A stretch of 64,000 nt of DNA from Botryllus schlosseri (GCA_051294905.1 CM119376.1:25854001-25918000), one strand, 5' to 3'. Shown: positions 8,748-56,178, counted from the first letter of the stretch. Notes: generated by a model not told the origin, from the sequence alone. Made by a program: numbers and translations.

Positions 8748-9742
8748 TGTCAACCTAACCTTGGAATTTATTCCCGCTTGAAGACAACGGAAAGATTATA
8801 AGTAGTTAAAATTTTCTTGCCAAGTAAAAAAGTATAAACAAACGACCAGTAACCACTCATGCGAGCAAAACAGAAAACTGATCATGGGTAATAATGAGAC
8901 ATAAACCCAGCCCATACATCATCAGATTACGATGTAGGAACAGAGTGCGAACAGGACCAGGGTTTTATTTCATATGCCATGCTATCACAGGTACAATTAT
9001 CTAATTCAAATAAGGATAATTCAAATTAGAATGAGAAAGAAAATATATTACTACAACCATTACTGACTGTACGGTGTGGTAGAAACCAAGAGTAACAGAA
9101 AACCTTAATTATATACACCCTGTCGGTATGGTATTTTACATATTGTCATCTTCTACTCCTAGTCCTACATGAAGTTCACGCGATAAAATTTATTCATTAT
9201 TCATGGATGGCTGCATAATATTTGAACTGCAGTAAACTCAACAGTTGCTCAGGGAACCAGTTATCGTTTACATTTGTGGCCACTAGAAGACGCTAATCTC
9301 TGAATTTGTTTCCATATTTGATGTCATTATGGATAAGTTTCTATTAATTTACATTGTAAATAACGCGAAAACTTGATATTTCTTCCAACACATACTACTT
9401 TAGTCATAAATGTTCAAATCTGTCTATTTACCGGTATGGCTCTTATGTCATTGCACTGTATCCCAAAATGTTTTGTTGTGGAGACTGCCATGGAGAACGC
9501 CGGGCATATTTGCTCCAGTCATGTTGATGGTTGCCAACATTATGGTATATTCAGTTAGTTAGGTTTATATAACATGTTTAGAGATCGCATGACATGTTGT
9601 GTTTGTATATTTTGATCGACAGCTCCAATCTGTGAAGCCGTATATCCACATATTGTTATCAGTCCAGTTTTGTAGATAATTTAGTTGTTGTGTGTGGTGT
9701 TTATTTTGAGTTGAGTTCATGAATGCTGTCGAGGCCGCTAGG
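8748..9742. promoter_or_regulatory. Putative bidirectional promoter interval PPP2R3C / TTLL5
   Basis: Head-to-head ATGs 995 bp apart; no TSS data. Confidence 0.55.
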
Positions 9743-38985
<29,243 letters not shown>

Positions 38986-41461: not shown

Positions 41462-44400
41462 ATGGAGAAGTTGTCGTTAGCGTTTTTACTCTCGCTCGCG
41501 GCGTTGAGCAATGGTTTGATGTTTAAATTGCCGGTTAACTCTGAAAAATGCCTGAAAGAAGAAATACACAAAGATGTTCTCGTGAAAGGAGACTACGAAG
41601 TCACTCCCATGGTTGGTGTCAAAGTGGACCTGAGGGTAAGGAGTTATCCGATAGAATAATGTTTTTTAGTTTATCCGAGTAAATATTTTGGTCTCACATA
41701 AAAGATTCCAACTCGGAATTTCACTCGAACACGACTATAGGCCTATGCACCAAGATAAGTATTACATATCCTGAATCTTATAGTTGTGACTTCTCACTTT
41801 ACACATATTGGGAAAATCTATCCAACAACTTCCCACATCCTGTGATTTTAGTGAGTATCTAAAATTTGCTTAGTACCATATCAAACTATATTTATGCTAA
41901 TCCAATATCTGAAAATTAGATTGAAATAATAGTCTATTTAGTTGACAACAATACTGCCTGTGTAATTTATGAAATATGTGTCAGCCTGTCATAGTTTATA
42001 TATATACTAGTGCCATATTCTCACAGTTTTTTAATCAGTACCGGTATTTAACGTAATAGGTAAAATATCTGATTTCTTCGGTAAGAAATTTGACTTTCGC
42101 AGCAACCACACAATCCAACTTGCATCAGTTGTTGATCATGCCTCTGATCTGACCCGGAAACCCAGAGAAAAAACTCCTCACAGTCACAGATGGTGTGTAT
42201 CTTGACCCGAGAAAGCCTCTGATACTGGGGATAAACTGTTTACAAATTATCATAATATAGTATCAGAAGTAGTACAAAGGAACTTGTGCTTTGGTACTTG
42301 AGTAACAGATGACAGCATATATCCAATGATCAGACAATAGCTTATCCAACAAATTGAAAAGCCGGGTCAGTTCTTGAACCCCTGCTCATCATTTAAATAA
42401 CTCCCAGGATGCTTTGTATATGGATCTTTATCCCTGTCTTCAGTGCCTTCTAATGATTTCCTTGTTACTTAATGGGAGGGATGATGCCAAGGTATGGGTT
42501 AGAAAATTATGATCGACCATACAATAAATTCATGTTGGAATAACCCGAATATTTTCGGCTGACACTCGTCAGCAACTAGTAGAGAATTGGAAAGAACATT
42601 GTATATCAACAATCGTATCACAAAATATGACGTCACCAGCATGGAATTTCGAACGAGAGAGCGTCATATTTTGTGATACGATTGTTGATATACAATGTTC
42701 TTTCCAATTCTCTACTAGTTGCTGACGATTACCCTGACGAGTGTCAGCCGAAAATACTCAGTTTTATTTCAATATGAATATACTATTCAATTGTATATTG
42801 AAGTTGTGTACCTCCAAGAAGCTCTTCATACAATAAATGTATCATATGATCCCTACGCTACATTGTTATCATATTACAGGTGACAGATTCAAACAGTCAT
42901 GTTTTGTATCAAAAAGAAGATGCAGGAGAGGGGAAATTTGCTTTCACTACAGATGATTATGACATGTTCCAAGTTTGCTTCAAGAGTGTATCGAGTGTTC
43001 ATGGTAATACCTCGTTTGCGTTGGGTTTCATGTTACATCAATTTTATATCAGTGCAGTTTATTTGTTGTGTTTAGAGTTTTCCGTTCATGTAAGTGGTAG
43101 TTTATGGCTAGATTTGCTTGTCTTTATAAGAGACAATGTTTTTGATGTCCTGAATAATCACGACGACCATGCCATACAATACAAACCTGTATTACTACTG
43201 GGGATGTACTTCTGAAATTGCTAGTATTTTTGGATTCACCTGGCTCGCTATTTTGTAATTTGCTGCCTCCACTTGCAGTATTACATAAAAACTACTTGTC
43301 ATTTTCTATAGCATGTACAATTGTACATTGTAAATCCACATGAAAATTGGAATGCGGTCACTGCATTTTCTTGAGCATCAACAGTGCGACTGTGCGTTAA
43401 GCACATACGAATGTATTCTTCAAATCCCTGTAGCACATAATTCTCACCTCCATACAAACCTGATTTTCAAAACGTAGAAAAAAGTAGACCTAGTTGAAAT
43501 AAGGGTAACAAATTTTGTGATTTCTTTTGACACAACTTGTTACAAATTTTATCTTGCTACTAACCTGACTATTTTTGAAGACTGCATGATTCAATTCTGC
43601 TGTTGACTTGTTTGCATACTCTCGTACCAATGATTTGAAGTCACTAGGCCTACCCTTATTGTTCTCTGCATTTGTGTGTCCGCCTGCTGACGTGGCTCCT
43701 ATCGCGCTGGTATCCTACACTCAGTAACTTGAAGTCAACAGCAATTAGACCTTTGGATGTGATCGCTGCATTCTATTTCAATCTACTACTACAATATTCG
43801 ATAGAATGTGAAACCAGAAGTTGAACTGACATATCGATCTCGACTTCCATCCATGCCACCTGATTTTGTCGCTTGTCCTTTTGTATTATCTTCCGTACTC
43901 TTCATTCAGTGTGCATTAGAGTGGAGTGAAAATAACATCTTTTTTAAATAAAAAAGGGGGTTATTAAATCCTGACAAATGACCTAAAACTTGGAAAACAA
44001 TTGACTTTTGAGGATTGCCCCCATTTTCCAGCCGACAACCCCCCAATTTCTGACCGCGAAGGTGTATAATGGCCCATCTCGACAACTACTGGTCGTAGAG
44101 TCATGATATATAGCTCAAAAGCTGCCAAAAACATGTTTCTATCTGTCTTGAGAACGTTTTCTCTATTGTGAAAACAAAACGTGTTACAGCTGGCTGGTAG
44201 ACCATTGCTGACATGGTATATTTGCTACTGAGGGCACAGTCAAAGCATGACTTAACTCTTCTCCTTTCTCATGGAGACGGTCGCTCGCTTGGGTATTCCG
44301 CAACAGTATTCACGATCGGGCGTCGTCAGCGGCACTTCCCGGCCCACTGATCGCTACCCGCCATGCATTCATTAAGAGCCTTGATGTTCTTTTGCCATTT

Positions 44401-45664
44401 TACCGATATTGAGCACGACGCAGTCCACACACCTCGTTACGTCCTACGCCAAGCCCATCTTGTACGTATACCCTTGTACGCTTCGTCCATGAGCACAGCA
44501 TAGTTGAAGAAATCTTCAAGCCTCAGTAAGCTGGGATGCCACAGCCTCACACATCTGCTGCAAGATCAGCGGTCTAAGCACAACTGTGTCCTTCCACTCC
44601 ACTTGAATGGGTCCGACGACCACTCAGGGTCTCCTTCCACAGCCATATTCTAGATCAGGGGTCACCAATTTTCACTCCACCCTAGTGTGCATGCCATTGC
44701 CTCTTTCTTTACTTCGCCTGGGTGTCTGATTTTATAGACTACTCCGAGTTGTTTCGACACCTTCCTTCATTGTATCGCAGTCTTGTGGTATTTGAAACGA
44801 TGAAATTCTTAATAAACTGATACTGACTCCAATTAAATGCATCCTATCTATTATATCAAGGTAAAACGGGCGATCAGGATATAAAGCTTTCCATGAAACG
44901 CGGAGTTGAAGCAAAGAATTATGACGATGTAAGTTTTAACGATGTCATGTTACTGTGGATGGTGTTGATAATTGATTTGTATCTGTTTAGCTCGCAAAGA
45001 CTGAAAAATTGAAGCCATTGGAAGTGGAATTGAGGCGACTTGAAGATTTGTCCGAGTCGATTGTGGGCGCTTTTGCCTATATGAAAACTAGAGAGATGGA
45101 GATGAGAGACACCAATGGTATGTTGTGACATGAGTTTAGTTTGGTTTTGAATAAGGATTTTCTGTTTGTATGTTGTGAAGATGTTTTTTCTCTAACGCCG
45201 ATACCATACCCCTAAGTCTCTGATCTTGCATTCACTGCAAAATTGTGTATGCAGCAGGCGTTATTTTACCATTCTCCATGCGGCCAATTGGAACTATTTG
45301 CGTAAAAGGTTTGACCATTTTGCGACTATCATTATTTGGACATGATTCTCTGTAAACAGTTTGGAACATTTATAGAGCTGAATAAAGACGAGGCAATTGT
45401 CAATTGACCTGGCGTTCAAAAGTTGGTCCACAGAGCAGGCTCATCGATTTTTGTCCTATTGAATATTCTGGAGCAATGGCAACTTATAAATATACCGTGT
45501 TATGCATGATGATTGATGACTAATAATTGATTTTCTTTTCAGAATCAACAAATTCCAGGGTGCTATATTTCAGTATTTTCTCAATGCTGTGTCTTGTCGG
45601 CCTGGCGACGTGGCAAGTACTGTACCTCCGAAAGTTCTTCAAGTCAAAGAAACTGATAGAATAG
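41462..45664 (+). CDS. TMED10: p24 delta / TMP21 cargo receptor; exons 41462-41635, 42880-43003, 44861-44928, 44991-45117, 45543-45664; 204 aa
   Basis: Signal peptide; [18 protein letters not shown]; [17 protein letters not shown]; GVEAKNY; [21 protein letters not shown]; TM segment [23 protein letters not shown]; C-terminal [13 protein letters not shown] introns in phase. Confidence 0.97.
42541..42830. repeat. Near-perfect inverted pair of Penelope-like tails
   Basis: Minus copy ~42541-42645 and plus copy ~42660-42830. Confidence 0.85.
43917..44684. mobile_element. Non-autonomous hAT-like element with GC-richer internal cargo, in TMED10 intron 2
   Basis: TIR TAGAGTGGAGTGAAAAT / ATTTTCACTCCACCCTA; perfect TSD GTGTGCAT. 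A lone right end of the same family lies at ~31380-31494. Confidence 0.88.
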
Positions 45665-46970: not shown

Positions 46971-47795
46971 CTTATGTGAACAAGATAGTCATGCGATGTA
47001 TCATGCCAACACGGATTTTGAAATTAGCAATTAGTCGTGGCACCATTTGTGATCGCTAAGGCAAGTTTTTGCAACTTTTTTTTACAGCTTCCTAAATACT
47101 CAGCTGTTTGGTGGATTCTTATATTGCAACTTTTCTCCATTTTTTTCATGCAACTTTTTTCGAATTTTCATGCAACTAACTTTTTCCTGGAAATATTTGG
47201 CACTATATGCAAATAGATTTCTTCACTATCGTTTAAATTTGAGGTCCTTTCTGATTTGATGTACATTAGGGCTAGAAAGCCGAAAATTACATTTCCACGG
47301 GGTCAATTTTTTCAGGCTATTGATTTTGTTGAAGTCGCCAACACCGTGTTTTGCTCAGTCCCTTGGATACGGATCGATTCGAGTATCTCATACCCTAATA
47401 ATTTCAAGGAACTTGTCCATAAATGCAACTTCGTGAAGAATAAATGCAAATTTTTACTGCAACTTTTGTGAAAAATAAATGCCACTTTCCACTGATTTGA
47501 CTGCAACCACAACTTGCGCTAGGGATCACACAGCACGTCGCAAAGATGCATTTTGAAAGCTGTCGCCACCAGCTGACTCAACTAATCCCACATGATCCAG
47601 TCCAAATTTCTTTTCAAACCACCTCAGTCATTTTCCGACTTTTGACATGCCCTAAAACTCCTTTACTTGCTATTGGTTATCATGAATGAAGCCACTTTAA
47701 CGCCACTGGATAATAACAAATTAAGCGATCCAATCTGTACAACTGCTGCGTGGCACATATCATTTCAAGAGCGTTCCATTTATCATTGTTTGTCA

Positions 47796-50103
47796 TTAAA
47801 TAAAAAAATTAATTGGTTCATCAAAACTATCGCAATCAACACTCGTAACTGCTGAGTGCTTAGGCAGTCTTCCTTTTTTTCGATACACCTCTTTGGGCAA
47901 TTGCACTTTTTGCGATTCGGTCACGTCTCTGTCCGCCAGTATACGGATGAGATTTCGGTGGAACGAATGGATCATTTGCAGGTTCAAAGTTAATTTTTGA
48001 TGAGAAATATCGACGATGTGCTGTACGTAGTCATCCGCGACCAGTCTTTCACCCTAAAAAATCAGAGGGGACTGACACGCAATTATTTGAAGCAGTCATT
48101 TGAATGTGCAGCGAATTGCATAAGTGTAACAACATCGCTACATGCAGTTCGACTTTTGGCCAGCGCACGTCTCAAATTGTCAGATGAGCGTCTGGGCCCA
48201 TCCCCTGCATCGCGGCTCATACAGTGTCTTTACAAAGTTAAAGTCTTGAAGAAAGTCCTGATGAAGGACAAATAAATGGAAGACATTGAAAGATTGAGAT
48301 CATACGCTGTAGCCGGCACATGAATACTGGAAATATTAGTATGGCAGGGTGTTCAGTAACAAAGTACTTCGATTTCTTTGGAGTACACAAACAGGTTCTG
48401 CCTGTTTGTACTATTTACTTCAGTGGTTATGATTCTAGACTACTTCTACTTAACAGTCAATTTTTCAGCCCAAATTACGCGAAAATACTTCATTTTTTAC
48501 TTGGACATCTATACTTATGTTACCCCTACTTGAGTACCAATAATGAATACTTCGGTCACCCCTGTTAGATCTAGAGACCACATCATTTCGTCGTTTCAAC
48601 ATCCTCATCTGCTGATTACATCACATTGTGCAAGGGATTACCTTGGAGTTGACGATGCCGCATAATCATGAAGCTTGTAGCTGAACATGGGTTACGTCAA
48701 TGATGCCCCAGTTAGTGAATTAACATAGGACATCGAGAGGTGGTTAAAATACTCGTATTTTATCCTCAGGTAGTGATTTCCAGGTATGTAAAAAGTCAGA
48801 ATTCTTGGCAAAGTTTTGTCCAAGAAAAGAAAAGTGTTAAGTAGAACTCTAAAATAATAACCAGGTGAGTAAATAGTGCCAGTAGGCAAAAAATGAATGT
48901 GTACTTCAAGAAAGTAGAAGTACTTCTTTACTGAGTACCTCTTGAGGACATTGCATTGTGTCTTGTATATCGCATTGTGTCAGGTATATCGCATTGTCTT
49001 GGGTAGATGAAATTCATCAGTTCCTTCCAATTACCATATCAAACTTACCTTATCATTTGTCAACGGTACTTCAAGACACGCGGTCCCTCTGACGGCTGCT
49101 ATGATTTTTCTCCCACTTTTTCCGAACGTGATTCCAGAATTACGAAATCCCGATTCAACGGCTGCAGTGTGTAGCAATCGAGCTTTTTCTATAGTCCGGC
49201 ATTGGGCGTGAAGTACAAAGGGTTCGAATTTATATTTGCTCGAGCAATCCACCGAGTAGAAAGTACTCGTCAGTTCTTTGATATCAAACGTTTTGTGTGA
49301 TACAAAAAACCAATGGCATCCTTTTTTACTGTTCTGTTTCGCGTTATCGAGTCTTTTCTCGGTTGTCAGATCATCAGAACACAATAATATCCTTCCCGAA
49401 CAGGAACTGGTTGTGAAGAAGTCGTCATGGGAGTTGATGTACGAGACCAGGTCGTGTATCTCTTCGTCGATGCTACCTTTACGACTGATGTCACATTTTC
49501 TTATTGTTGCTTCTTTCCACCGCCGAAATTCATCGACAGATGCACCGTACGTTCGACCTGTGAATTGATAGATGCTGAGATCATGATCATTCACTGGCAG
49601 TCAAGTAGGCTACTATCTGTTCTGAGCAACCGAATCAAATAGGTCACCTCTGTAATTACCACTTTGTGTAGTGAAGGAGAGTGGTTCTAATTTTACACTT
49701 CTACTACAGCGACTGCATTCCGTACAAAAGTACCGTACTTCTCAAATTTTGTCAATCAGAATGCCACATAATAAATGTATCTGAACCGATCTTATCAGTA
49801 AAACAGGCTGAATTGCAATATTGTACATCAATGCCATTTTGCAGCTATTACAGCTCACCGACTAAAAAATATTTGGTATGCACCGTCGTCTTTTAAAAAC
49901 ACCTGTTTACAGCTTCTATTTGTAGTAGCTGTGGTAGGGTCTACCTGAGGAATTACTTACCCTTCAGTAATATCAATAACTACTTGGACCACCTAAGATA
50001 GATGGATTCTACGGTACATAAAAATCTCCATCACAGAAAACTCACTTTTCCTCATGAAAGAGTTGTCAGAGTCGGCCGACTTTGTTGCATCTTTGGTTGA
50101 CAT
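47796..50103 (-). CDS. TYW3: tRNA wybutosine-synthesizing protein 3; exons 50103-50046, 49557-49049, 48053-47796; 274 aa
   Basis: DISRKGSIDEEI, FFTTSSCSGRI, KFEPFVLHAQC, ESGFRNSGIT, AVRGTACLEVPL. The third exon GERLVADDYVQHIVDISHQKL matches the family C-terminal helix. The ATG exon was found 0.5 kb upstream with a GTGAGT donor in phase 1. Confidence 0.92.
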
Positions 50104-50377
50104 TATATCAGCAGCTTGACCTTGAAATATAATCACTAACAGAAAAATCATATTTTAAAGCACATATATGAAATAAGTTCGCAAAGTGAATCCGACTGAA
50201 AATCATTAAGAACTAGCGGAAGAAGTCCTCAAGCCAACATGACGACGATTATAATTTAGACATGAAATCAGCCTTAAAGATAGGTCAGGATTGCAAGTGA
50301 CTATTATTCTATTACGATATATACAGCCCTCAGTATCATGGTTTCAGTAGGTCACAAAAGATGAGTGACATGCCTGA

Positions 50378-50818
50378 TCAATACATCGCATCCCTATCCT
50401 CTTCATTTAAAAAGTATATTTTTACATCCCCTTTGTCAGTCGTGACTATTTCATCAAACTTAATAAAGAAGTAAGCCCCCAGTCCATACGTCAAGCAAGG
50501 AAATCCCAAATTTAAAATTTTCAAAAATCCAAAGAACCTGTCTTCCAAATTCAAGTTCTGATGCTTCCGTTTCGAACAGTGATATTTTAAATATGGCCAA
50601 CATCCCGTTCTCAATATATGATAATTGACATTATCCACTTTCCAGTTGAAATGAGACTTCCCGAATTGATCGTTCACAACACTCGATTGTCGTACAAAAT
50701 ATGAGGTCCAGTGAGGTAAGTCCCTTTGTCGCAAATGTGCCGTGAGTACCTCCGATGCTTTAGGTTTGGATGTATTCCTTCGCCAAACGCATATTGCATT
50801 GATGATTTTGGATTTCAT
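50378..50818 (-). CDS. C15orf61: C15orf61-like conserved protein (DUF4528), single coding exon, 146 aa
   Basis: KPKASEVLTAHLRQRDLPHWTSYFV, NDQFGKSHFNW, YHILRTGCWPYLKYHCSKR and YFLNEEDRDAMY are characteristic of the family. Confidence 0.9.
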   Translation of the reverse strand: MKSKIINAICVWRRNTSKPKASEVLTAHLRQRDLPHWTSYFVRQSSVVNDQFGKSHFNWKVDNVNYHILRTGCWPYLKYHCSKRKHQNLNLEDRFFGFLKILNLGFPCLTYGLGAYFFIKFDEIVTTDKGDVKIYFLNEEDRDAMY

Positions 50819-51483
50819 TAATTCAGAAATTTAAATAGAAGCCTTGCCTAACAAACGTAACGAGAAGGTTCTAAAAAAAATGCAATGTGACAGTCATGGC
50901 TACAATAGCCCCAATCGGACAAGATAAGCGGAATCATCATGATGGTCTGGCCTATTGCGACCATCAATTATAAAATCAGCAGTTAGAGCTACTGTGATCA
51001 CAAAGTCCTTCATAAATTACATGGTATGATATTAAATTGAACGCATGTTGGCATGACCGACAACTATAGAAAAGACATAGCAAGCCATATTATGTTCTAG
51101 GTATGATTTTGACCTCAGCAGTTCTTTAAAAATACTGCAGTTATTGAACGACCAACATTTCCAAGCTGAATACGCAAACGGAAAAACTATTTGACTGGCG
51201 GTAGCAGATTTGTTACAAGTTTATCATGGGTGAATGTGTGAGAACACAGTCTATCATCATGAAATTCCCATTTTGAGAATCCAAACTGAAATCCGTCAAA
51301 GGGCTATGTCCGCAGTAGTCCCTGGCCCTGCAGAAAAACTCAATAGCAGATTTCTCAGTAAAAATAATCTCCTCAAAATGTTCGAGCGTCTGAATGACGT
51401 AGGAGTACCAAAACTTGTGTACTCATTCGAGCTAAAGCGCAAAATTTATCGCTTTTCCACAATATAAAACGGTTCAAAGCTTT

Positions 51484-52776
51484 CTACGCTTCACTCGTAG
51501 CAGCTTTTTTATACCAAAAACGAGCACGATGATCTTCACTGCAACTTATAAATCCCGGGCAAGTGGTAGAGTGTGCGATCTGATGGACGGGACCATTGTG
51601 ACCAAGCGAGAGTAGCCTCTGACGTTCACCAGTGCGTGTATCCCAACAGCACAAAGATATCGTCTTTTCGTCCGGAAACAATGCGTAATCTTCTGTATGG
51701 TTGAAGACTCCTTGCGCCTTATGGATTTGTTTTCCGCTTAATTCTGCTCCGGTGTACGCAATTAGTGATCTTCCAGTAGCGGTTTCCCATAGTCGACATA
51801 CACTGTCTTTCCCACTCGTGAGCAGATACTTTCCATTTCGAGAAAACTGCACGGAACACACTTGCTCCCCACTGTGTGCTTTTTGATATGTGGCAATACA
51901 TCTATTGCTCACACCATCCCATAGCTTTACATCACCATCTTTATTAGCACTGGCATAAACTTTGCCTTCATTATTGTAGGTAATCATTGTGATCGGACCT
52001 CTGTGTTGATCTTTGCTGTTGCAACTAACGTAGCATTGGAATGTGTTGAGGTCGTACAGGCGTATTACCGGATGTTGTGTGCCGACTAGCAGAAAATCAC
52101 CTGTAGGGTGCATTGCCAAAGCGCGCACCGTAGCTACTTCTTGAATTGTCTTCGATGCCTTCTTTGTGGAGCTTTTTGAGAAGTCAAACACCTTCACTGT
52201 ACAGTCTCGACTGCCTGACACAAGCAGTTGTTGACTTGGATGGAAATCCAAACATGTAACCTCATCCATATGGTCGTATAAAGTACGAATGACAGGGTGA
52301 TCGACCATTCCGGCTTGATCAATGTGTCCTTGATTGGCTTCGAATATGCTCTTTGAAATCATACGTTCTACATCCAGCACTTTGATTGATGTATCAACCG
52401 ACCCAGTTGCTACATACAGACCATTTTTCGAGAATTTGGCAGCACGGCATGGGCCTTTGTGAGCCGTAACATAGCATGTGTCATACATGGTTACCTCTGG
52501 CGACGTAATTTGTACATCTGTTTCGAATTCCAAGTCGATTCCGCTGCCAGGAGCGACCAGATCTTTGTTAGTTGTCATTCTGAAATCCTTTTCGTGTTCA
52601 ATGTGCGTGATTCCTGTCTCAAACACTTTGAGAAGTTTGTCAGACGGGGGACATTGCGTTGTCGGCTTGACTTGAGAGGTCAAGCTCTTGGCAACGGCGA
52701 TGTATCCGTCGTTCAACAGCTGACTGATGATTGCTCGGTAAAGATTGTCTCGCATTTTTACATTGTCAGGCTTCAT
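51484..52776 (-). CDS. CSTF1: Cleavage stimulation factor 50 kDa subunit (WD40), intronless, 430 aa
   Basis: N-terminal dimerisation motif LYRAIISQLLNDGY; TCYVTAHKGPCR; HPVIRTLYDH; WD repeats ending SCSEDHRARFWY. ATG at 52776; the longer track ORF starts at an upstream GTG. Confidence 0.97.
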   Translation of the reverse strand: MKPDNVKMRDNLYRAIISQLLNDGYIAVAKSLTSQVKPTTQCPPSDKLLKVFETGITHIEHEKDFRMTTNKDLVAPGSGIDLEFETDVQITSPEVTMYDTCYVTAHKGPCRAAKFSKNGLYVATGSVDTSIKVLDVERMISKSIFEANQGHIDQAGMVDHPVIRTLYDHMDEVTCLDFHPSQQLLVSGSRDCTVKVFDFSKSSTKKASKTIQEVATVRALAMHPTGDFLLVGTQHPVIRLYDLNTFQCYVSCNSKDQHRGPITMITYNNEGKVYASANKDGDVKLWDGVSNRCIATYQKAHSGEQVCSVQFSRNGKYLLTSGKDSVCRLWETATGRSLIAYTGAELSGKQIHKAQGVFNHTEDYALFPDEKTISLCCWDTRTGERQRLLSLGHNGPVHQIAHSTTCPGFISCSEDHRARFWYKKAATSEA

Positions 52777-52826
52777 TTTCCTTTTTCCGTCAAGATAACG
52801 ATACACAAACAAGCTCACGTACTCAC

Positions 52827-52899
52827 CAACTTCGAATTCCTCAAGACCGCAGGCAATGTGTTTGCTTGAATTTACATACTCAATTTGAACTCTGTTTTC
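52827..52899 (-). other. Candidate 73-nt leader exon upstream of CSTF1
   Basis: Bounded by acceptor GGTTTCTTAG (AG at 52901-52900) and donor G|GTGAGT (52826); a second GTGAGC lies 8 nt further on. Confidence 0.45.
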
Positions 52900-53779
52900 C
52901 TAAGAAACCAGCCATGCGAAAAATTTTAGTATCATTCATCATCATCATGCAATGTACGAAATTGAGCATTGCGAGGCCGCAGTAGAGTGAATTTCGCAAT
53001 TTTCCGACAGATTTTTCCATCAAAATCAGGAAGGTCCTTATTTTCACTGATGCTCAATCGAAAGCGATGTCACCAACACATAGTAGAGATAGTGTAGTGG
53101 TTACGATAAGCGCCCAGCACGCAGGCGAACCGCGTTCGATTCCCGTCGGAGGTTTATCTGGGCTCCTCTTCCCCTGCCGTTGCCGTTCTTACGGCGACAA
53201 AAAAAAAGCCCAGAAAAAGACCCGACGAAAGAAAGCACTCACAAAGAATGGAAAAGAACTAGTAGAAAGAGCCGCGGCTTCAAAGAGATCAACATCGAAA
53301 AAGAACTGTGACATCGGGCACTCTAGGCCGAGGTGGATGTTAGAGTAAAGGATCGCTACTGATGCGTGTCGTTCTACATCCTCCTATCTGTTCATGACAT
53401 CGCATTGTGTCTTATCGCATTGTACATTGTGTGTGACTTGTTCAGATAAAAATATAACCCAACCATGTTATGTTATATCTGTACACAGCTGACCTTCTAT
53501 GAAAGCCTGAATACTCATGCTCACTGCGGCAAGCATGTGACTCCAAAGGAATTCCTTCGATTTATCAAGTCTGGTTGATAATGTGTCTTGAAAACTTATT
53601 TCAGTGTCTATAAATATAGCTCAGTTGCCCCACCAATATTCCTAGCTATACCATAGCCTTTATAAAGGCTATGGCTATACTTTCCGTCCAATATACGAGC
53701 CGCCAGATGACAGTATGGAGAAATAAGATCTCAGGTAATCGTTACCGTGGGAGATGTTACTCAACATTTGTCACCAGAA
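52900..53779. promoter_or_regulatory. Putative bidirectional promoter interval CSTF1 cluster / COA4-SANBR
   Basis: Divergent ATGs at 52776 and 53780; the interval is partly occupied by a SINE. Confidence 0.55.
53085..53480 (+). mobile_element. tRNA-derived SINE
   Basis: A box TAGTGTAGTGG (53090-53100) and B box GTTCGATTCC (53134-53143) in a tRNA(Asp/Val/Glu)-like head with a broken anticodon stem, followed by an A-rich body and a 3' end shared with 40640-40925. Confidence 0.75.
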
Positions 53780-56178
53780 ATGAATTCGTCCGGGCATGCT
53801 TGGAAGGAAAGGCCTGCTTCGCCAGAAGATGACGATGAAGAAGACCCAGTTGATGCTATGATCAAGAAGACCGGCTGTCTGGAGGAACACAACAACGTAC
53901 AAGTACGAAAGCATTGCCTAAAACCCATGTTTTACCTCCTACCAATTCATTCAATGCAATTTGCATCGTATGTGTATGAAACATTTGTGTTGTAGGCCCA
54001 CATTGCGTATCTTGTGTCATTAAAATAATAGAACTGCCGAATATGCGAATATTATTATCACTCACCTCCTGAATGTATCTCATAAAATATGTTGGTATAA
54101 AGTTAACCCGGTTCAGTCAGGTGGTGATAAAATTGGATTTCCACAATATCAGATGAACACTGTCGGTCAAATAGATGAAGTGGTAGCCTGTTAATCGAAT
54201 TGTCCTCACATCGCTTTTTAATTCGAATATGGCAAATTTTGAAGGCATTTTATTCACTCATTCAACTGTTGAATTTTCTTTATTTCAAAACATTGCGATA
54301 ATGTGACTGCGGAAAATGTAGATATACGAAAGTGGAAAAACTTCTCACATCTCTCTTTCTCTCTATGTATATTAAGATCTCTTAATTAAGCACCTACACT
54401 ACAAAAGAACCAAATTGTGTGAAAATGTGACCCTCAAAACTGATGCATAAAAAATGGTCTCAAAAAGTTAGGTATATACCCGTATGTCTTATGTCTCATG
54501 ACATCTTTGCGGTCTGAATTTCAAGTCCACAGGCCATGATGTTCCTCGTCTTGCAAATAACGTCTTAAAACAAGACCAAAAAAATTGAATGCATCAAAAA
54601 TTGTCTTGATAAGATACGTTTTACGTCTGATTATTAAGTCGAATAATCGTGATAATTCAATATGCTCTTAAAAGCTCAATTCGTCTCAACTTTAAGATTT
54701 AACTTTATCAGTAAGACTGAGATTCCAAAATATCAGATCATATCCTTGTACGGTCTTGAATTATTTTTTTGTAGTGAATATACCTTTGACCTGCAATGTT
54801 ACAGGTGTTGAAGATATTAAAGTTGAGTTCTACAGTAAATATAAGATATATGCATATGGATTGAGGAGATACAGACAAAGCACAGCATATACAGTAGGCC
54901 TACATTGTATCGTTTTCATAACTTATGCATACAGGCTACTACGATGTTCTTGATTGTGGGGATCGAGTAAGCATTTGAGTAACCACCTATAAAATTTGGT
55001 AAACAGGTATCAACAAACGTATTAGATGTAATGTTCCACCCTAGTCTTATATGAAATAAATATTGTTGTCCAATCAAACAAATCATCCTAAAAATCACCT
55101 TCCTCATAGCAGAGAGAAAACATAACAAGGCATGAGTGTTACATATGTAATGGGGAGGGCTAGAGGATGTTAATTAGCGGCTTATCTCCTTGTTAAGCTT
55201 TCATAAACACCGATTCTATGCCGGCATTGTTTGTAATATGGGAACATCATGTCGGCGTATAGATCTGCGTAATAATTGAAACACAATCCCGCTTGTGTTA
55301 TTGATATAGTATTGTACTCAAATCAAGCTGAACGTCTGACTTTTAATGGTGGTTCCTCTATATCTGTTGAAGGGTATTTGTAGAAATCCAACCTTATCAT
55401 TATTAATGCTGTCTCAAAAGATGCCAAGGTGCCTTGCGCAAGGTTTTAGTAACATGTTCAATAATGTTGTACCATTTGAGGTGTTCGAGTCATGTATGTT
55501 GAGGTGTTTCACTTGTTCTTTTAGGAAAGTAAATTTATGCTATATTTTTTGTATCATAAGTAAGATGATGGAATATCATAGTACTGCTTATTATTATATT
55601 TCAAAGGATATGGTGGTGATGAATTTGCAAAATCATGTGAAGGTGATGTATTAGGTTCACAATCTGATACATACAGCCCAAGCTGCTTCAATAGGCTTTA
55701 CTGGTAAAATTGTATTGGTACTGGTGCTTATTTTTATTTGACTGAGAGGGATGTCCAACAGGTTGCATCAGGGTTCTAACTACAACAGTTTTGTTTTACT
55801 ATTATTGAAACTACAGCTATACAAATACATCATCTTCTATAACATCTGTCCTATTTTTTCACTTATAAGTCTGTATTTTGTCTTGACCTTTTAGAAACCA
55901 ACTAGATCAGATGGCCATGACGAAAGTGATGAATTTGTGGTCAGTTCCTTATATTGCTGGGTTGGGGGTCCGCGCTAGAAAAAGGTCGAAAACACCGTAC
56001 TGAAGCAATATTTTCTGTCAGATTTTATCACAGCCTTGCACGAATGAGATTTAAACTTGCTACTTTTCATTGTTAGTTTTGCATGTTCGACCATCGCGAC
56101 TGGCGGAAGTGTCAGCAAGAAGTGAAAAAGTTCAAGGAGTGCATCGAAAAATCAAAAAGTTCACCAAAGCAGCAATAA
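53780..56178 (+). CDS. COA4: Cytochrome c oxidase assembly factor 4 (twin CX9C); exons 53780-53902 and 56077-56178; 74 aa
   Basis: GHAWKER...DDDEEDPVDAMIKKTG C-LEEHNNVQF-C MFDHRDWRK C-QQEVKKFKE-C. The twin CX9C motif is completed only after the phase-0 GTACGA...TTGTTAG splice. Confidence 0.93.

What the first reader, a model, noticed from the sequence alone, without database searches (positions are those of the whole stretch)
47796..52899. CSTF1 - C15orf61 - TYW3: three unrelated same-strand genes arranged as an operon or around one shared leader exon
Seen: CSTF1 stop to C15orf61 ATG is ~670 bp, and C15orf61 stop to TYW3 ATG is ~275 bp. Each downstream gene has an acceptor just before its ATG with no local upstream donor exon recognised: TTGCATTTTTTTTAG at 50872-50871 (52 nt before the C15orf61 ATG) and ATATTTCAAG at 50122-50121 (17 nt before the TYW3 ATG). 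I saw no AATAAA in either spacer. The only obvious strong upstream donor is G|GTGAGT at 52826, just 5' of CSTF1. Splicing it to 50121 joins the leader frame ENRVQIEYVNSSKHIACGLEEFEV in frame to GQAADI-MSTK of TYW3. Known: ascidian operons are resolved by SL trans-splicing, lack real intergenic DNA and are enriched in single-exon genes; the cholinergic VAChT/ChAT locus instead uses a shared leader with an intronless gene nested in intron 1. Inference: either a tricistronic SL operon, or one leader exon alternatively spliced to produce different genes, with CSTF1 and C15orf61 nested in the first intron of TYW3.
Basis: partly seen in the sequence, partly recalled or inferred. Interest (0 to 1): 0.8.

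Follow-up and report, generated by a model that had tools for sequence, protein, structure and literature searches.

The report
Probable sea-squirt operon: CSTF1, C15orf61, TYW3
Three unrelated genes sit head to tail on one strand of a sea-squirt chromosome and are most likely an ordinary tunicate operon, at least for C15orf61 and TYW3, not a new kind of shared-leader gene.

Summary
On the minus strand lie an intronless CSTF1 (52776-51484), an intronless C15orf61/DUF4528 (50818-50378) and a three-exon TYW3 (50103-47796). The stop-to-ATG spacers are 665 and 274 nt. Neither spacer holds AATAAA or ATTAAA, and an acceptor-like AG precedes each ATG. Plus-strand genes bound the cluster on both sides, so there is one obvious promoter region (52900-53780).

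New evidence: C15orf61 followed by TYW3 is conserved in Styela clava, with only 90 nt from stop to ATG. A related styelid contig that looks RNA-derived (the TYW3 intron is removed) runs from the end of C15orf61 through a 173-nt spacer into TYW3. That spacer has AATAAA 13 nt before an acceptor. This matches the published Ciona type of spliced-leader (SL) operon.

CSTF1 is linked only in this species and probably one sister species, and 665 nt could hold a separate promoter.
- C15orf61-TYW3 operon: about 0.7-0.75.
- All three genes co-transcribed: about 0.4.
- Cis-spliced shared leader as the main mode: about 0.05-0.08. Its "in-frame" join means nothing, because the leader frame has no ATG.

No RNA of this species could be reached. 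First readers noted similar operon-like runs elsewhere in this genome. This is a known kind of system and of low interest.

The parts
52900..53780 (.). Region between the divergent plus-strand neighbour and CSTF1. It is the only obvious promoter region for the cluster. It holds a 34-nt palindrome around TATAAA (53647-53679) and a roughly 350-nt MITE-like element with inverted ends (53061-53406).
   Evidence: CpG observed/expected is slightly raised here (1.1-1.24) against 0.72-0.95 in the spacers, which is weak evidence. Promoter function is inferred, not shown.
52827..52899 (-). It is preceded by acceptor-like TTTCTTAG (AG 52901-52900) and followed by G|GTGAGT (GT 52826-52825). It has no ATG in the frame that joins TYW3.
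   Evidence: Whether either site is used is unknown.
51484..52776 (-). CSTF1 (CstF-50), a single coding exon of 430 aa.
   Evidence: Pfam CSTF1_dimer plus WD40. It has the same MKPDNVKMRD start as the 80%-identical homologue P0241. It is also a single uninterrupted ORF in L005 and L006.
50819..51483 (-). Spacer A, 665 nt, between the CSTF1 stop and the C15orf61 ATG. It is either the CSTF1 3' UTR running up to a trans-splice acceptor, or a 3' UTR followed by a separate promoter and outron.
   Evidence: No AATAAA or ATTAAA, and no repeat copies elsewhere in the window. No conservation with the upstream regions of relatives.
50871..50885 (-). Candidate (trans-)splice acceptor TTGCATTTTTTTTAG, 52 nt before the C15orf61 ATG.
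   Evidence: 11 of 14 pyrimidines, about 0.9 such sites per kb. By eye, an AG lies 2-17 nt before the C15orf61 ATG in L001, S. clava L003 and Clavelina L007; the pyrimidine filter scored it in L001 and L003 only.
50378..50818 (-). C15orf61 homologue (DUF4528), a single coding exon of 146 aa.
   Evidence: Pfam E 5e-64. 95% identical to P0001 from a sister species.
50104..50377 (-). Spacer B, 274 nt, between the C15orf61 stop and the TYW3 ATG. It has two acceptor-like sites, AG 50137-50136 and AG 50122-50121.
   Evidence: The orthologous spacer is 90 nt in S. clava and 173 nt in L004.
50046..50103 (-). TYW3 coding exon 1 (MSTKDATKSADSDNSFMRK, phase 1), donor AAAA|GTGAGT.
   Evidence: It is required because exon 2 has no in-frame Met (translation).
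49049..49557 (-). TYW3 coding exon 2.
   Evidence: Pfam TYW3 E 2e-42. 57% identical to S. clava TYW3.
47796..48053 (-). TYW3 coding exon 3, including the stop codon.
   Evidence: It aligns to the C-terminal part of L004 TYW3. The intron position is shared with S. clava.

Best explanation
This is a tunicate-type operon resolved by spliced-leader (SL) trans-splicing. RNA polymerase II starts in the region shared with the divergent plus-strand neighbour (about 52900-53780) and reads leftwards. C15orf61 and TYW3 are made from one precursor. The C15orf61 mRNA is cut and polyadenylated at or just before an acceptor 17-32 nt upstream of the TYW3 ATG, and the SL is spliced onto that acceptor to give a capped TYW3 mRNA.

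This two-gene core is older than the species, because it is shared with Styela. The intronless CSTF1 was placed upstream of it in this lineage. CSTF1 is either the first cistron of a three-gene operon, with about 613 nt of 3' UTR running to the acceptor at 50871, or a separate unit whose downstream neighbour has its own promoter in the 665-nt spacer. The odds between these two are about even.

Shown here: gene identities, order, strand, spacing, the sequence motifs, synteny in relatives, and a dicistronic contig in a relative. Inferred: co-transcription in this species, SL addition, and the poly(A) sites.
For: - Three same-strand genes with 665-nt and 274-nt stop-to-ATG gaps are bounded by plus-strand genes on both sides: an EMP24/TMED gene (41462-45664) and SANBR (from 56197).
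- In S. clava (L003), a C15orf61 ORF at 9428-9910 sits 90 nt before the TYW3 ATG at 10001, with the acceptor CATTACAACAG 8 nt before the ATG. That leaves no room for a separate promoter.
- L004 (Logan run SRR32906204) carries the last 25 codons of C15orf61, a stop, a 173-nt spacer with AATAAA at 207 followed by TTTCAG ending at 226, and then TYW3 from 278.
- L004 and L008, from that same run, both lack the TYW3 exon 2/3 intron. That intron is present in the window, in S. clava, and in the genomic ORFs P0126 and P0125, which read into it. So the run is most likely RNA and L004 an unresolved dicistronic transcript.
- The cluster matches published Ciona operon traits. Genes abut with no intercistronic DNA, and 16 of 18 junctions lack AATAAA (PMC1488885). 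Single-exon genes are enriched, above all as the 5'-most gene, and 185 three-gene operons are known (PMC2760879).
- Acceptor-like sites are enriched just upstream of the ATGs of these genes across species.
- A sister-species contig has an ORF running in from its end, then 635 nt, then C15orf61. This is the same geometry as the window (that the ORF is CSTF1 is inferred).
Against: - No RNA of this species was reachable, so there are no SL junctions, no poly(A) sites and no spacer-spanning reads.
- The stop-to-ATG gaps, especially 665 nt, are long enough for a promoter plus an outron of usual Ciona size (mean 438 nt, peak about 100 nt; PMC4691747).
- CSTF1 and C15orf61 are unlinked in another relative (L005 versus L001, same run) and in S. 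clava. C15orf61-TYW3 is also absent in that relative and in Clavelina.
- Each acceptor alone is within chance.
- That L004 is RNA is inferred from intron absence, not known from metadata. It carries a one-base frame break in the C15orf61 tail.
- In Botryllus, the fuhc gene pair with a 227-nt spacer gives dicistronic RNA but no SL was found (PMC3691228). Dicistronic RNA alone therefore does not prove an SL operon.
Confidence: 0.7

Rival explanations
1. Three closely packed but independent transcription units. Each gene has its own promoter in the DNA just upstream, that is in spacer A, and in spacer B or the C15orf61 body. Each may be SL trans-spliced as a non-operon gene. The C15orf61-TYW3 adjacency in Styela would then be retained synteny, or overlapping units.
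For: Ciona outrons peak near 100 nt and average 438 nt (PMC4691747), so 613 nt and even 258 nt could hold a promoter plus an outron. S. clava C15orf61 has no called gene in the 9 kb upstream, so it has its own promoter there. The linkages are broken in other ascidians without loss of the genes. In Botryllus fuhc, the authors favoured read-through over an operon (PMC3691228).
Against: The 90-nt S. clava gap and the layout in L004, where AATAAA is followed directly by an acceptor, leave no room for a TYW3 promoter outside the upstream gene. L004 joins both genes in what is most likely RNA. The spacers show no CpG or GC rise, unlike the region upstream of CSTF1 (weak evidence).
Confidence: 0.2
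2. Shared cis-spliced leader (VAChT/ChAT type). The 73-nt exon at 52899-52827 is a common non-coding first exon whose donor at 52826 splices alternatively to 50870 (C15orf61) or 50120 (TYW3). CSTF1, and for TYW3 also C15orf61, would then be nested in the first intron.
For: A consensus G|GTGAGT lies 50 nt upstream of the CSTF1 ATG. GTRAGT occurs only 0.34 per kb on this strand, and GGTRAGT only 4 times in 64 kb. There is no good acceptor between the donor and the CSTF1 ATG, other than a weak AAAAAG 4 nt before it. Cross-cistron cis-splicing was seen as minor products at Botryllus fuhc (PMC3691228), so such junctions could exist as by-products of a polycistronic precursor.
Against: The leader frame has no ATG, so the in-frame join is a 1-in-3 coincidence. 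No GTRAGT lies upstream of CSTF1 in L005 or L006, nor in the 1 kb upstream of S. clava C15orf61. The C15orf61-TYW3 pair exists without CSTF1 or this leader in S. clava. Using the donor would splice out the CSTF1 ORF, leaving an essential gene without a defined way to be expressed. The three proteins are functionally unrelated, unlike VAChT and ChAT (established knowledge).
Confidence: 0.06

Closest known systems
Ciona intestinalis SL-resolved operons (Satou et al. 2006, PMC1488885; Satou et al. 2008, PMC2760879)
   Same: Same-strand unrelated genes. The upstream genes are single-exon. There is no AATAAA before the junctions and an acceptor lies shortly before each downstream ATG. Three-gene operons are common in Ciona (185 known). 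In the relatives S. clava and L004, the C15orf61-TYW3 junction is as tight as Ciona junctions.
   Different: In this window the stop-to-ATG gaps are 274 and 665 nt. Without poly(A) mapping it cannot be said that the cistrons abut, which is the Ciona criterion (under 100 nt between gene models). No SL reads are available for this species.
Botryllus schlosseri fuhc-sec / fuhc-tm pair (PMC3691228)
   Same: A stolidobranch ascidian, two same-strand genes, a featureless spacer of about 230 nt (274 nt here), and a dicistronic processed RNA that can be detected.
   Different: No SL was found on the downstream fuhc gene, and the authors favoured read-through. Here the downstream gene is preceded by acceptor-like sites, and in relatives by much shorter gaps.
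Cholinergic locus (VAChT nested in the first intron of ChAT, with a shared leader exon)
   Same: Geometry only. An intronless gene would lie between a donor-bearing non-coding exon and the acceptor of a downstream gene.
   Different: The genes here are functionally unrelated. The leader is not conserved in relatives. No transcript evidence exists. Generic SL trans-splicing explains unpaired acceptors in tunicates.

Membership tests
Ciona-type SL-resolved operon | Consecutive genes lie on the same strand with no opposite-strand gene between them. | tested here: met
   CSTF1, C15orf61 and TYW3 are all on the minus strand and are flanked by plus-strand genes.
Ciona-type SL-resolved operon | Cistrons abut: the upstream poly(A) site lies at the downstream trans-splice acceptor, with under 100 nt between gene models. 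| not testable with these tools
   No poly(A) or 5'-end data exist for this species. Stop-to-ATG gaps are 665 and 274 nt. The orthologous C15orf61-TYW3 gap is 90 nt in S. clava, and L004 has AATAAA 13 nt before the acceptor.
Ciona-type SL-resolved operon | Downstream genes carry the spliced leader. | not testable with these tools
   Only acceptor-like sequences can be seen. The exact-protein look-ups found no transcript contigs of this species. No SL copy lies in the window.
Ciona-type SL-resolved operon | An unresolved polycistronic transcript is detectable. | tested here: inconclusive
   Contig L004 from a relative joins the C15orf61 tail, the spacer and spliced TYW3. That it is RNA is inferred. 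Nothing is available for this species or for the CSTF1-C15orf61 junction.
Ciona-type SL-resolved operon | No canonical AATAAA lies upstream of the internal junctions, and upstream genes tend to be single-exon (statistical traits). | tested here: met
   One search found no AATAAA or ATTAAA in either spacer. Searches show CSTF1 and C15orf61 as single ORFs. Both traits are weak discriminators.
Shared-leader nested locus (VAChT/ChAT type) | A common 5' non-coding exon is cis-spliced to alternative downstream genes. | not testable with these tools
   The donor at 52826 exists. No junction data are available.
Shared-leader nested locus (VAChT/ChAT type) | The arrangement, meaning the leader plus the nested gene, is conserved in related species. 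| tested here: not met
   S. clava has C15orf61-TYW3 without CSTF1. There is no GTRAGT upstream of CSTF1 in L005 or L006.
Shared-leader nested locus (VAChT/ChAT type) | The genes serve one pathway and are co-regulated. | tested here: not met
   Pfam identities: an mRNA 3'-end factor, a DUF4528 protein and a tRNA wybutosine enzyme. That these functions are unrelated rests on established knowledge.

The most novel reading that the evidence does not exclude
An operon caught growing at its 5' end. An old C15orf61-TYW3 operon, shared with Styela, would have acquired the intronless CSTF1 gene upstream in this lineage. That would give a three-gene unit with an unusually long (about 610 nt) first junction. 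The GTGAGT at 52826 would then allow a minor cis-spliced route from the 5' leader to the downstream acceptors that skips CSTF1. Because CSTF1 encodes a cleavage/polyadenylation factor, the efficiency of 3'-end formation at its own junction could feed back on how much precursor reaches the downstream genes.
Probability: 0.12. Interest if true: 0.5.

Novelty: new member of a known kind. Interest (0 to 1): 0.25.

Why it matters
If confirmed, this adds one more operon to a tunicate genome in which operons are expected (about 20% of Ciona genes). The useful parts are modest. C15orf61-TYW3 is an operon candidate conserved between styelid lineages, so it could serve as a test locus for how ascidian operons are kept or broken. 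The gene calls returned for the S. clava locus list no C15orf61 at that place, which is a typical operon mis-annotation. The later arrival of CSTF1 gives a dated example of how genes may join an operon. None of this changes the current understanding of trans-splicing.

Tried and rejected
- Exact-protein look-ups for the window's CSTF1 and C15orf61, and for S. clava C15orf61, found no contigs. No transcript of this species could therefore be read.
- The two sister-species contigs (SRR25569784) are listed without DNA.
- The protein Atlas gave nothing useful for C15orf61.
- Rfam at gathering and E-value thresholds, and ARAGORN, found nothing in the window or cluster. There is no SL RNA gene here.
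- The Ciona SL (ATTCTATTTGAATAAG, PMC7986045) gave only a chance-level match with 3 mismatches. No SL remnant lies upstream of the intronless genes, so there is no sign of recent retroposition from a trans-spliced mRNA.
- CpG observed/expected is 0.95 genome-like throughout and separates promoters only weakly.
- Non-coding alignment of spacer A with the upstream regions of four relatives found nothing.
- Pfam on small ORFs flanking CSTF1 in L005 and L006 was uninformative.
- I considered a 46-nt 5'-UTR intron in CSTF1 (52826-52781, branch-like CTTGAC). I left it open because the acceptor is purine-rich and the intron is very short.
- I considered whether L004 is genomic DNA with TYW3 intron loss. 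I judged this less likely, because a second, different TYW3 contig from the same run (L008) also lacks the intron.


Full report
**What is there.** I read 47000-54000 on the minus strand and listed ORFs.
- CSTF1 is a 430-codon ORF from ATG 52776 to the stop at 51484. Pfam gives CSTF1_dimer at E 7e-21 plus WD40 propeller families. Its start, MKPDNVKMRD, is the same as in the closest homologue P0241.
- C15orf61 is a 146-codon ORF at 50818-50378. Pfam gives DUF4528 at E 5e-64.
- TYW3 (Pfam E 2e-42) has three coding exons that join in frame: 50103-50046 (donor AAAA|GTGAGT, phase 1), 49557-49049 and 48053-47796.
- The stop-to-ATG gaps are 665 nt and 274 nt.

All are at the stated coordinates. AG 52901-52900 lies before a 73-nt segment that ends in G|GTGAGT (GT 52826-52825). 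AG 50872-50871 lies 52 nt before the C15orf61 ATG. AG 50122-50121 lies 17 nt before the TYW3 ATG, with a better acceptor (TTTTTCTGTTAG) 15 nt further up. Neither spacer has AATAAA or ATTAAA. The same is true of the 1.3 kb after TYW3, and only about half a site is expected by chance in 665 nt, so this absence says little.

**Chance.** Acceptor-like sites (YAG after at least 10 of 14 pyrimidines) occur about 2.2 per kb per strand in the window, so any one of them near an ATG is unremarkable. Taken across species, five of ten ATGs of these three genes have such a site within 60 nt, where about 12% each is expected. My binomial estimate is about 0.004. By eye, C15orf61 has an AG 2-52 nt before its ATG in all four species examined (window, L001, S. 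clava L003, Clavelina L007), although the Clavelina site did not pass the pyrimidine filter. The flanking DNA shows no alignable conservation. GTRAGT occurs 0.34 per kb on this strand and GGTRAGT only four times in 64 kb, so the donor at 52826 is mildly unusual. The "in-frame" join of the leader to TYW3 is correct arithmetic, but the leader frame (ENRVQIEYVNSSKHIACGLEEFEV) has no Met. It is a one-in-three coincidence.

**Surroundings.** The cluster is bounded by plus-strand genes.
- An EMP24/TMED10-type gene at 41462-45664 is convergent with TYW3.
- On the other side is SANBR, from 56197 on (BTB_SANBR). It is preceded by a plus-strand exon at about 53777-53900 that looks like the start of COA4. 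Pfam found nothing in so short a piece.
- The roughly 880 nt between that exon and CSTF1 is therefore a divergent intergenic region and the only obvious promoter region. It holds a 34-nt palindrome centred on TATAAA and a MITE-like element of about 350 nt. CpG observed/expected is slightly higher there (1.1-1.24) than in the two spacers (0.72-0.95), which is weak evidence.

**Organism.** Earlier follow-ups of this scan call the genome a stolidobranch sea squirt that uses a spliced leader (I did not check this). My searches agree. The nearest named TYW3 is from Styela clava at 57% identity, and the nearest CSTF1 and C15orf61 sequences are unnamed Logan contigs, followed by Ciona, Clavelina and Phallusia.

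**Comparative evidence, the main new result.**
- In S. clava (L003, OZ123519.1) tblastn finds a C15orf61 ORF directly upstream of TYW3 on the same strand. It runs from 9428 to 9910 with the acceptor TTATTATTATTCTCACAG 2 nt before its ATG. TYW3 starts at 10001, only 90 nt after the stop, with CATTACAACAG 8 nt before the ATG. The gene calls returned with that locus list TYW3 but no C15orf61.
- L004, a 1604-nt Logan contig from run SRR32906204, carries the last 25 codons of C15orf61 (local alignment score 91 to S. clava), the stop, a 173-nt spacer, and a complete TYW3 ORF from 278. In that spacer AATAAA (207-212) is followed 13 nt later by TTTCAG (AG 225-226). A cleavage site expected 10-30 nt after the signal would coincide with the acceptor, which is the abutting layout described for Ciona operons (PMC1488885).
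- L004 lacks the TYW3 exon 2/3 intron. So does L008, a second and different TYW3 contig from the same run. That intron is present at the same codon in the window, in S. clava, and in two genomic contigs whose called ORFs read into it (P0126, P0125). The simplest reading is that the run is RNA and that L004 is an unresolved dicistronic transcript.
- Caveats: I could not see the run's metadata, and L004 has a one-base frame break just upstream of the conserved C15orf61 tail.

**CSTF1 is a later arrival.**
- It is not in the 10 kb upstream of the S. clava pair.
- In run SRR10746997, CSTF1 is 80% identical and is a single uninterrupted ORF (L005). No C15orf61 lies in the 2.3 kb after it. C15orf61 there (70% identical, L001) sits between Axin and aldolase genes on the opposite strand, with no TYW3 nearby.
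- In Clavelina, C15orf61 is followed by an SNF2-family gene.
- Only a sister species keeps the window's geometry (C15orf61 95% identical, P0001). An ORF runs in from the contig end and stops 635 nt before C15orf61. No DNA was available for that contig, and that the ORF is CSTF1 is my inference.

**Literature frame.**
- Ciona operons are same-strand genes that abut without intercistronic DNA. Downstream genes receive the one SL, and 16 of 18 mapped junctions lack AATAAA (PMC1488885).
- About 20% of Ciona genes are in 1,310 operons, 185 of them with three genes. Single-exon genes are enriched, above all as the 5'-most gene (PMC2760879).
- Non-operon trans-spliced genes have outrons of mean length 438 nt with a peak near 100 nt (PMC4691747).
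- The stolidobranch Botryllus fuhc pair (227-nt gap) gives dicistronic RNA, but no SL was found and the authors preferred read-through (PMC3691228).

**Judgement.**
- The C15orf61-TYW3 pair has the layout, the conservation and, in a relative, the probable precursor RNA of a Ciona-type operon. I put co-transcription with SL resolution at about 0.7-0.75.
- For CSTF1, the single promoter region, the single-exon 5' gene and the sister-species geometry favour inclusion. The 665-nt gap, the recent origin of the linkage, and the fact that S. clava C15orf61 must have its own promoter favour a separate unit. I put a three-gene operon at about 0.4.
- All three genes independent: about 0.2.
- A cis-spliced shared leader as the main mode: about 0.05-0.08. 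It rests on one donor motif, is not conserved, has no coding sense, and would splice out CSTF1. Junctions from 52827 to the downstream acceptors could still occur as minor by-products of a polycistronic precursor, as seen at fuhc.

**Verdict.** This is a known kind of system in an organism where it is expected. First readers noted several similar operon-like runs elsewhere in this genome. Interest is low. The conserved styelid C15orf61-TYW3 pair and the later addition of CSTF1 are small but usable details. No RNA of this species could be reached with the tools, so the operon remains inferred.

Noticed in passing
L003:9428-9910 (Styela clava OZ123519.1): An intact C15orf61 ORF of 160 codons lies 90 nt upstream of TYW3. 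The gene calls returned for this locus list no gene there, so it was probably swallowed into the TYW3 model or missed. This is the usual fate of operon genes in automatic annotation.
   Followed up: partly
window 53061-53406 and 48348-48964: Two copies of a MITE/foldback-like element share ends of the type ATCGCATTGTGTC. One lies upstream of CSTF1 (26-nt inverted ends, with a tRNA-like A/B-box stretch inside that ARAGORN and Rfam do not call). The other lies in TYW3 intron 2 (100-nt arms, 73% complementary).
   Followed up: partly
window 53647-53679: A 34-nt near-perfect palindrome centred on CTTTATAAAG lies between the divergent CSTF1 and the plus-strand neighbour. It could act as a TATA element in both directions.
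   Followed up: no
window 53777-53902 (+): A plus-strand ORF starting MNSSGHAWKERPASPEDDDEEDPVDAMIKKTGC resembles the N-terminus of COA4 (by recall only). With the exon at about 56077 noted by another reader, COA4 would span a 2.2-kb intron and end next to the SANBR start.
   Followed up: no
L004:1-110: The C15orf61 tail in this contig is in frame only for its last 25 codons. Upstream of GACCAGAAGAAG the best match shifts by one base. This could be an assembly error, an allele or a decaying gene.
   Followed up: partly
L004 and L008 (both from SRR32906204): One sequencing run yields two different full-length TYW3 sequences (59% and 56% identical to the window's exon 2). The sample is either a mix of ascidian species or one species with two TYW3 genes. 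Only L004 has C15orf61 upstream.
   Followed up: no
window 49961-49955 (-): A consensus GGTAAGT sits inside TYW3 intron 1. It is one of only four GGTRAGT on this strand of the window and may mark an unrecognised alternative exon.
   Followed up: no
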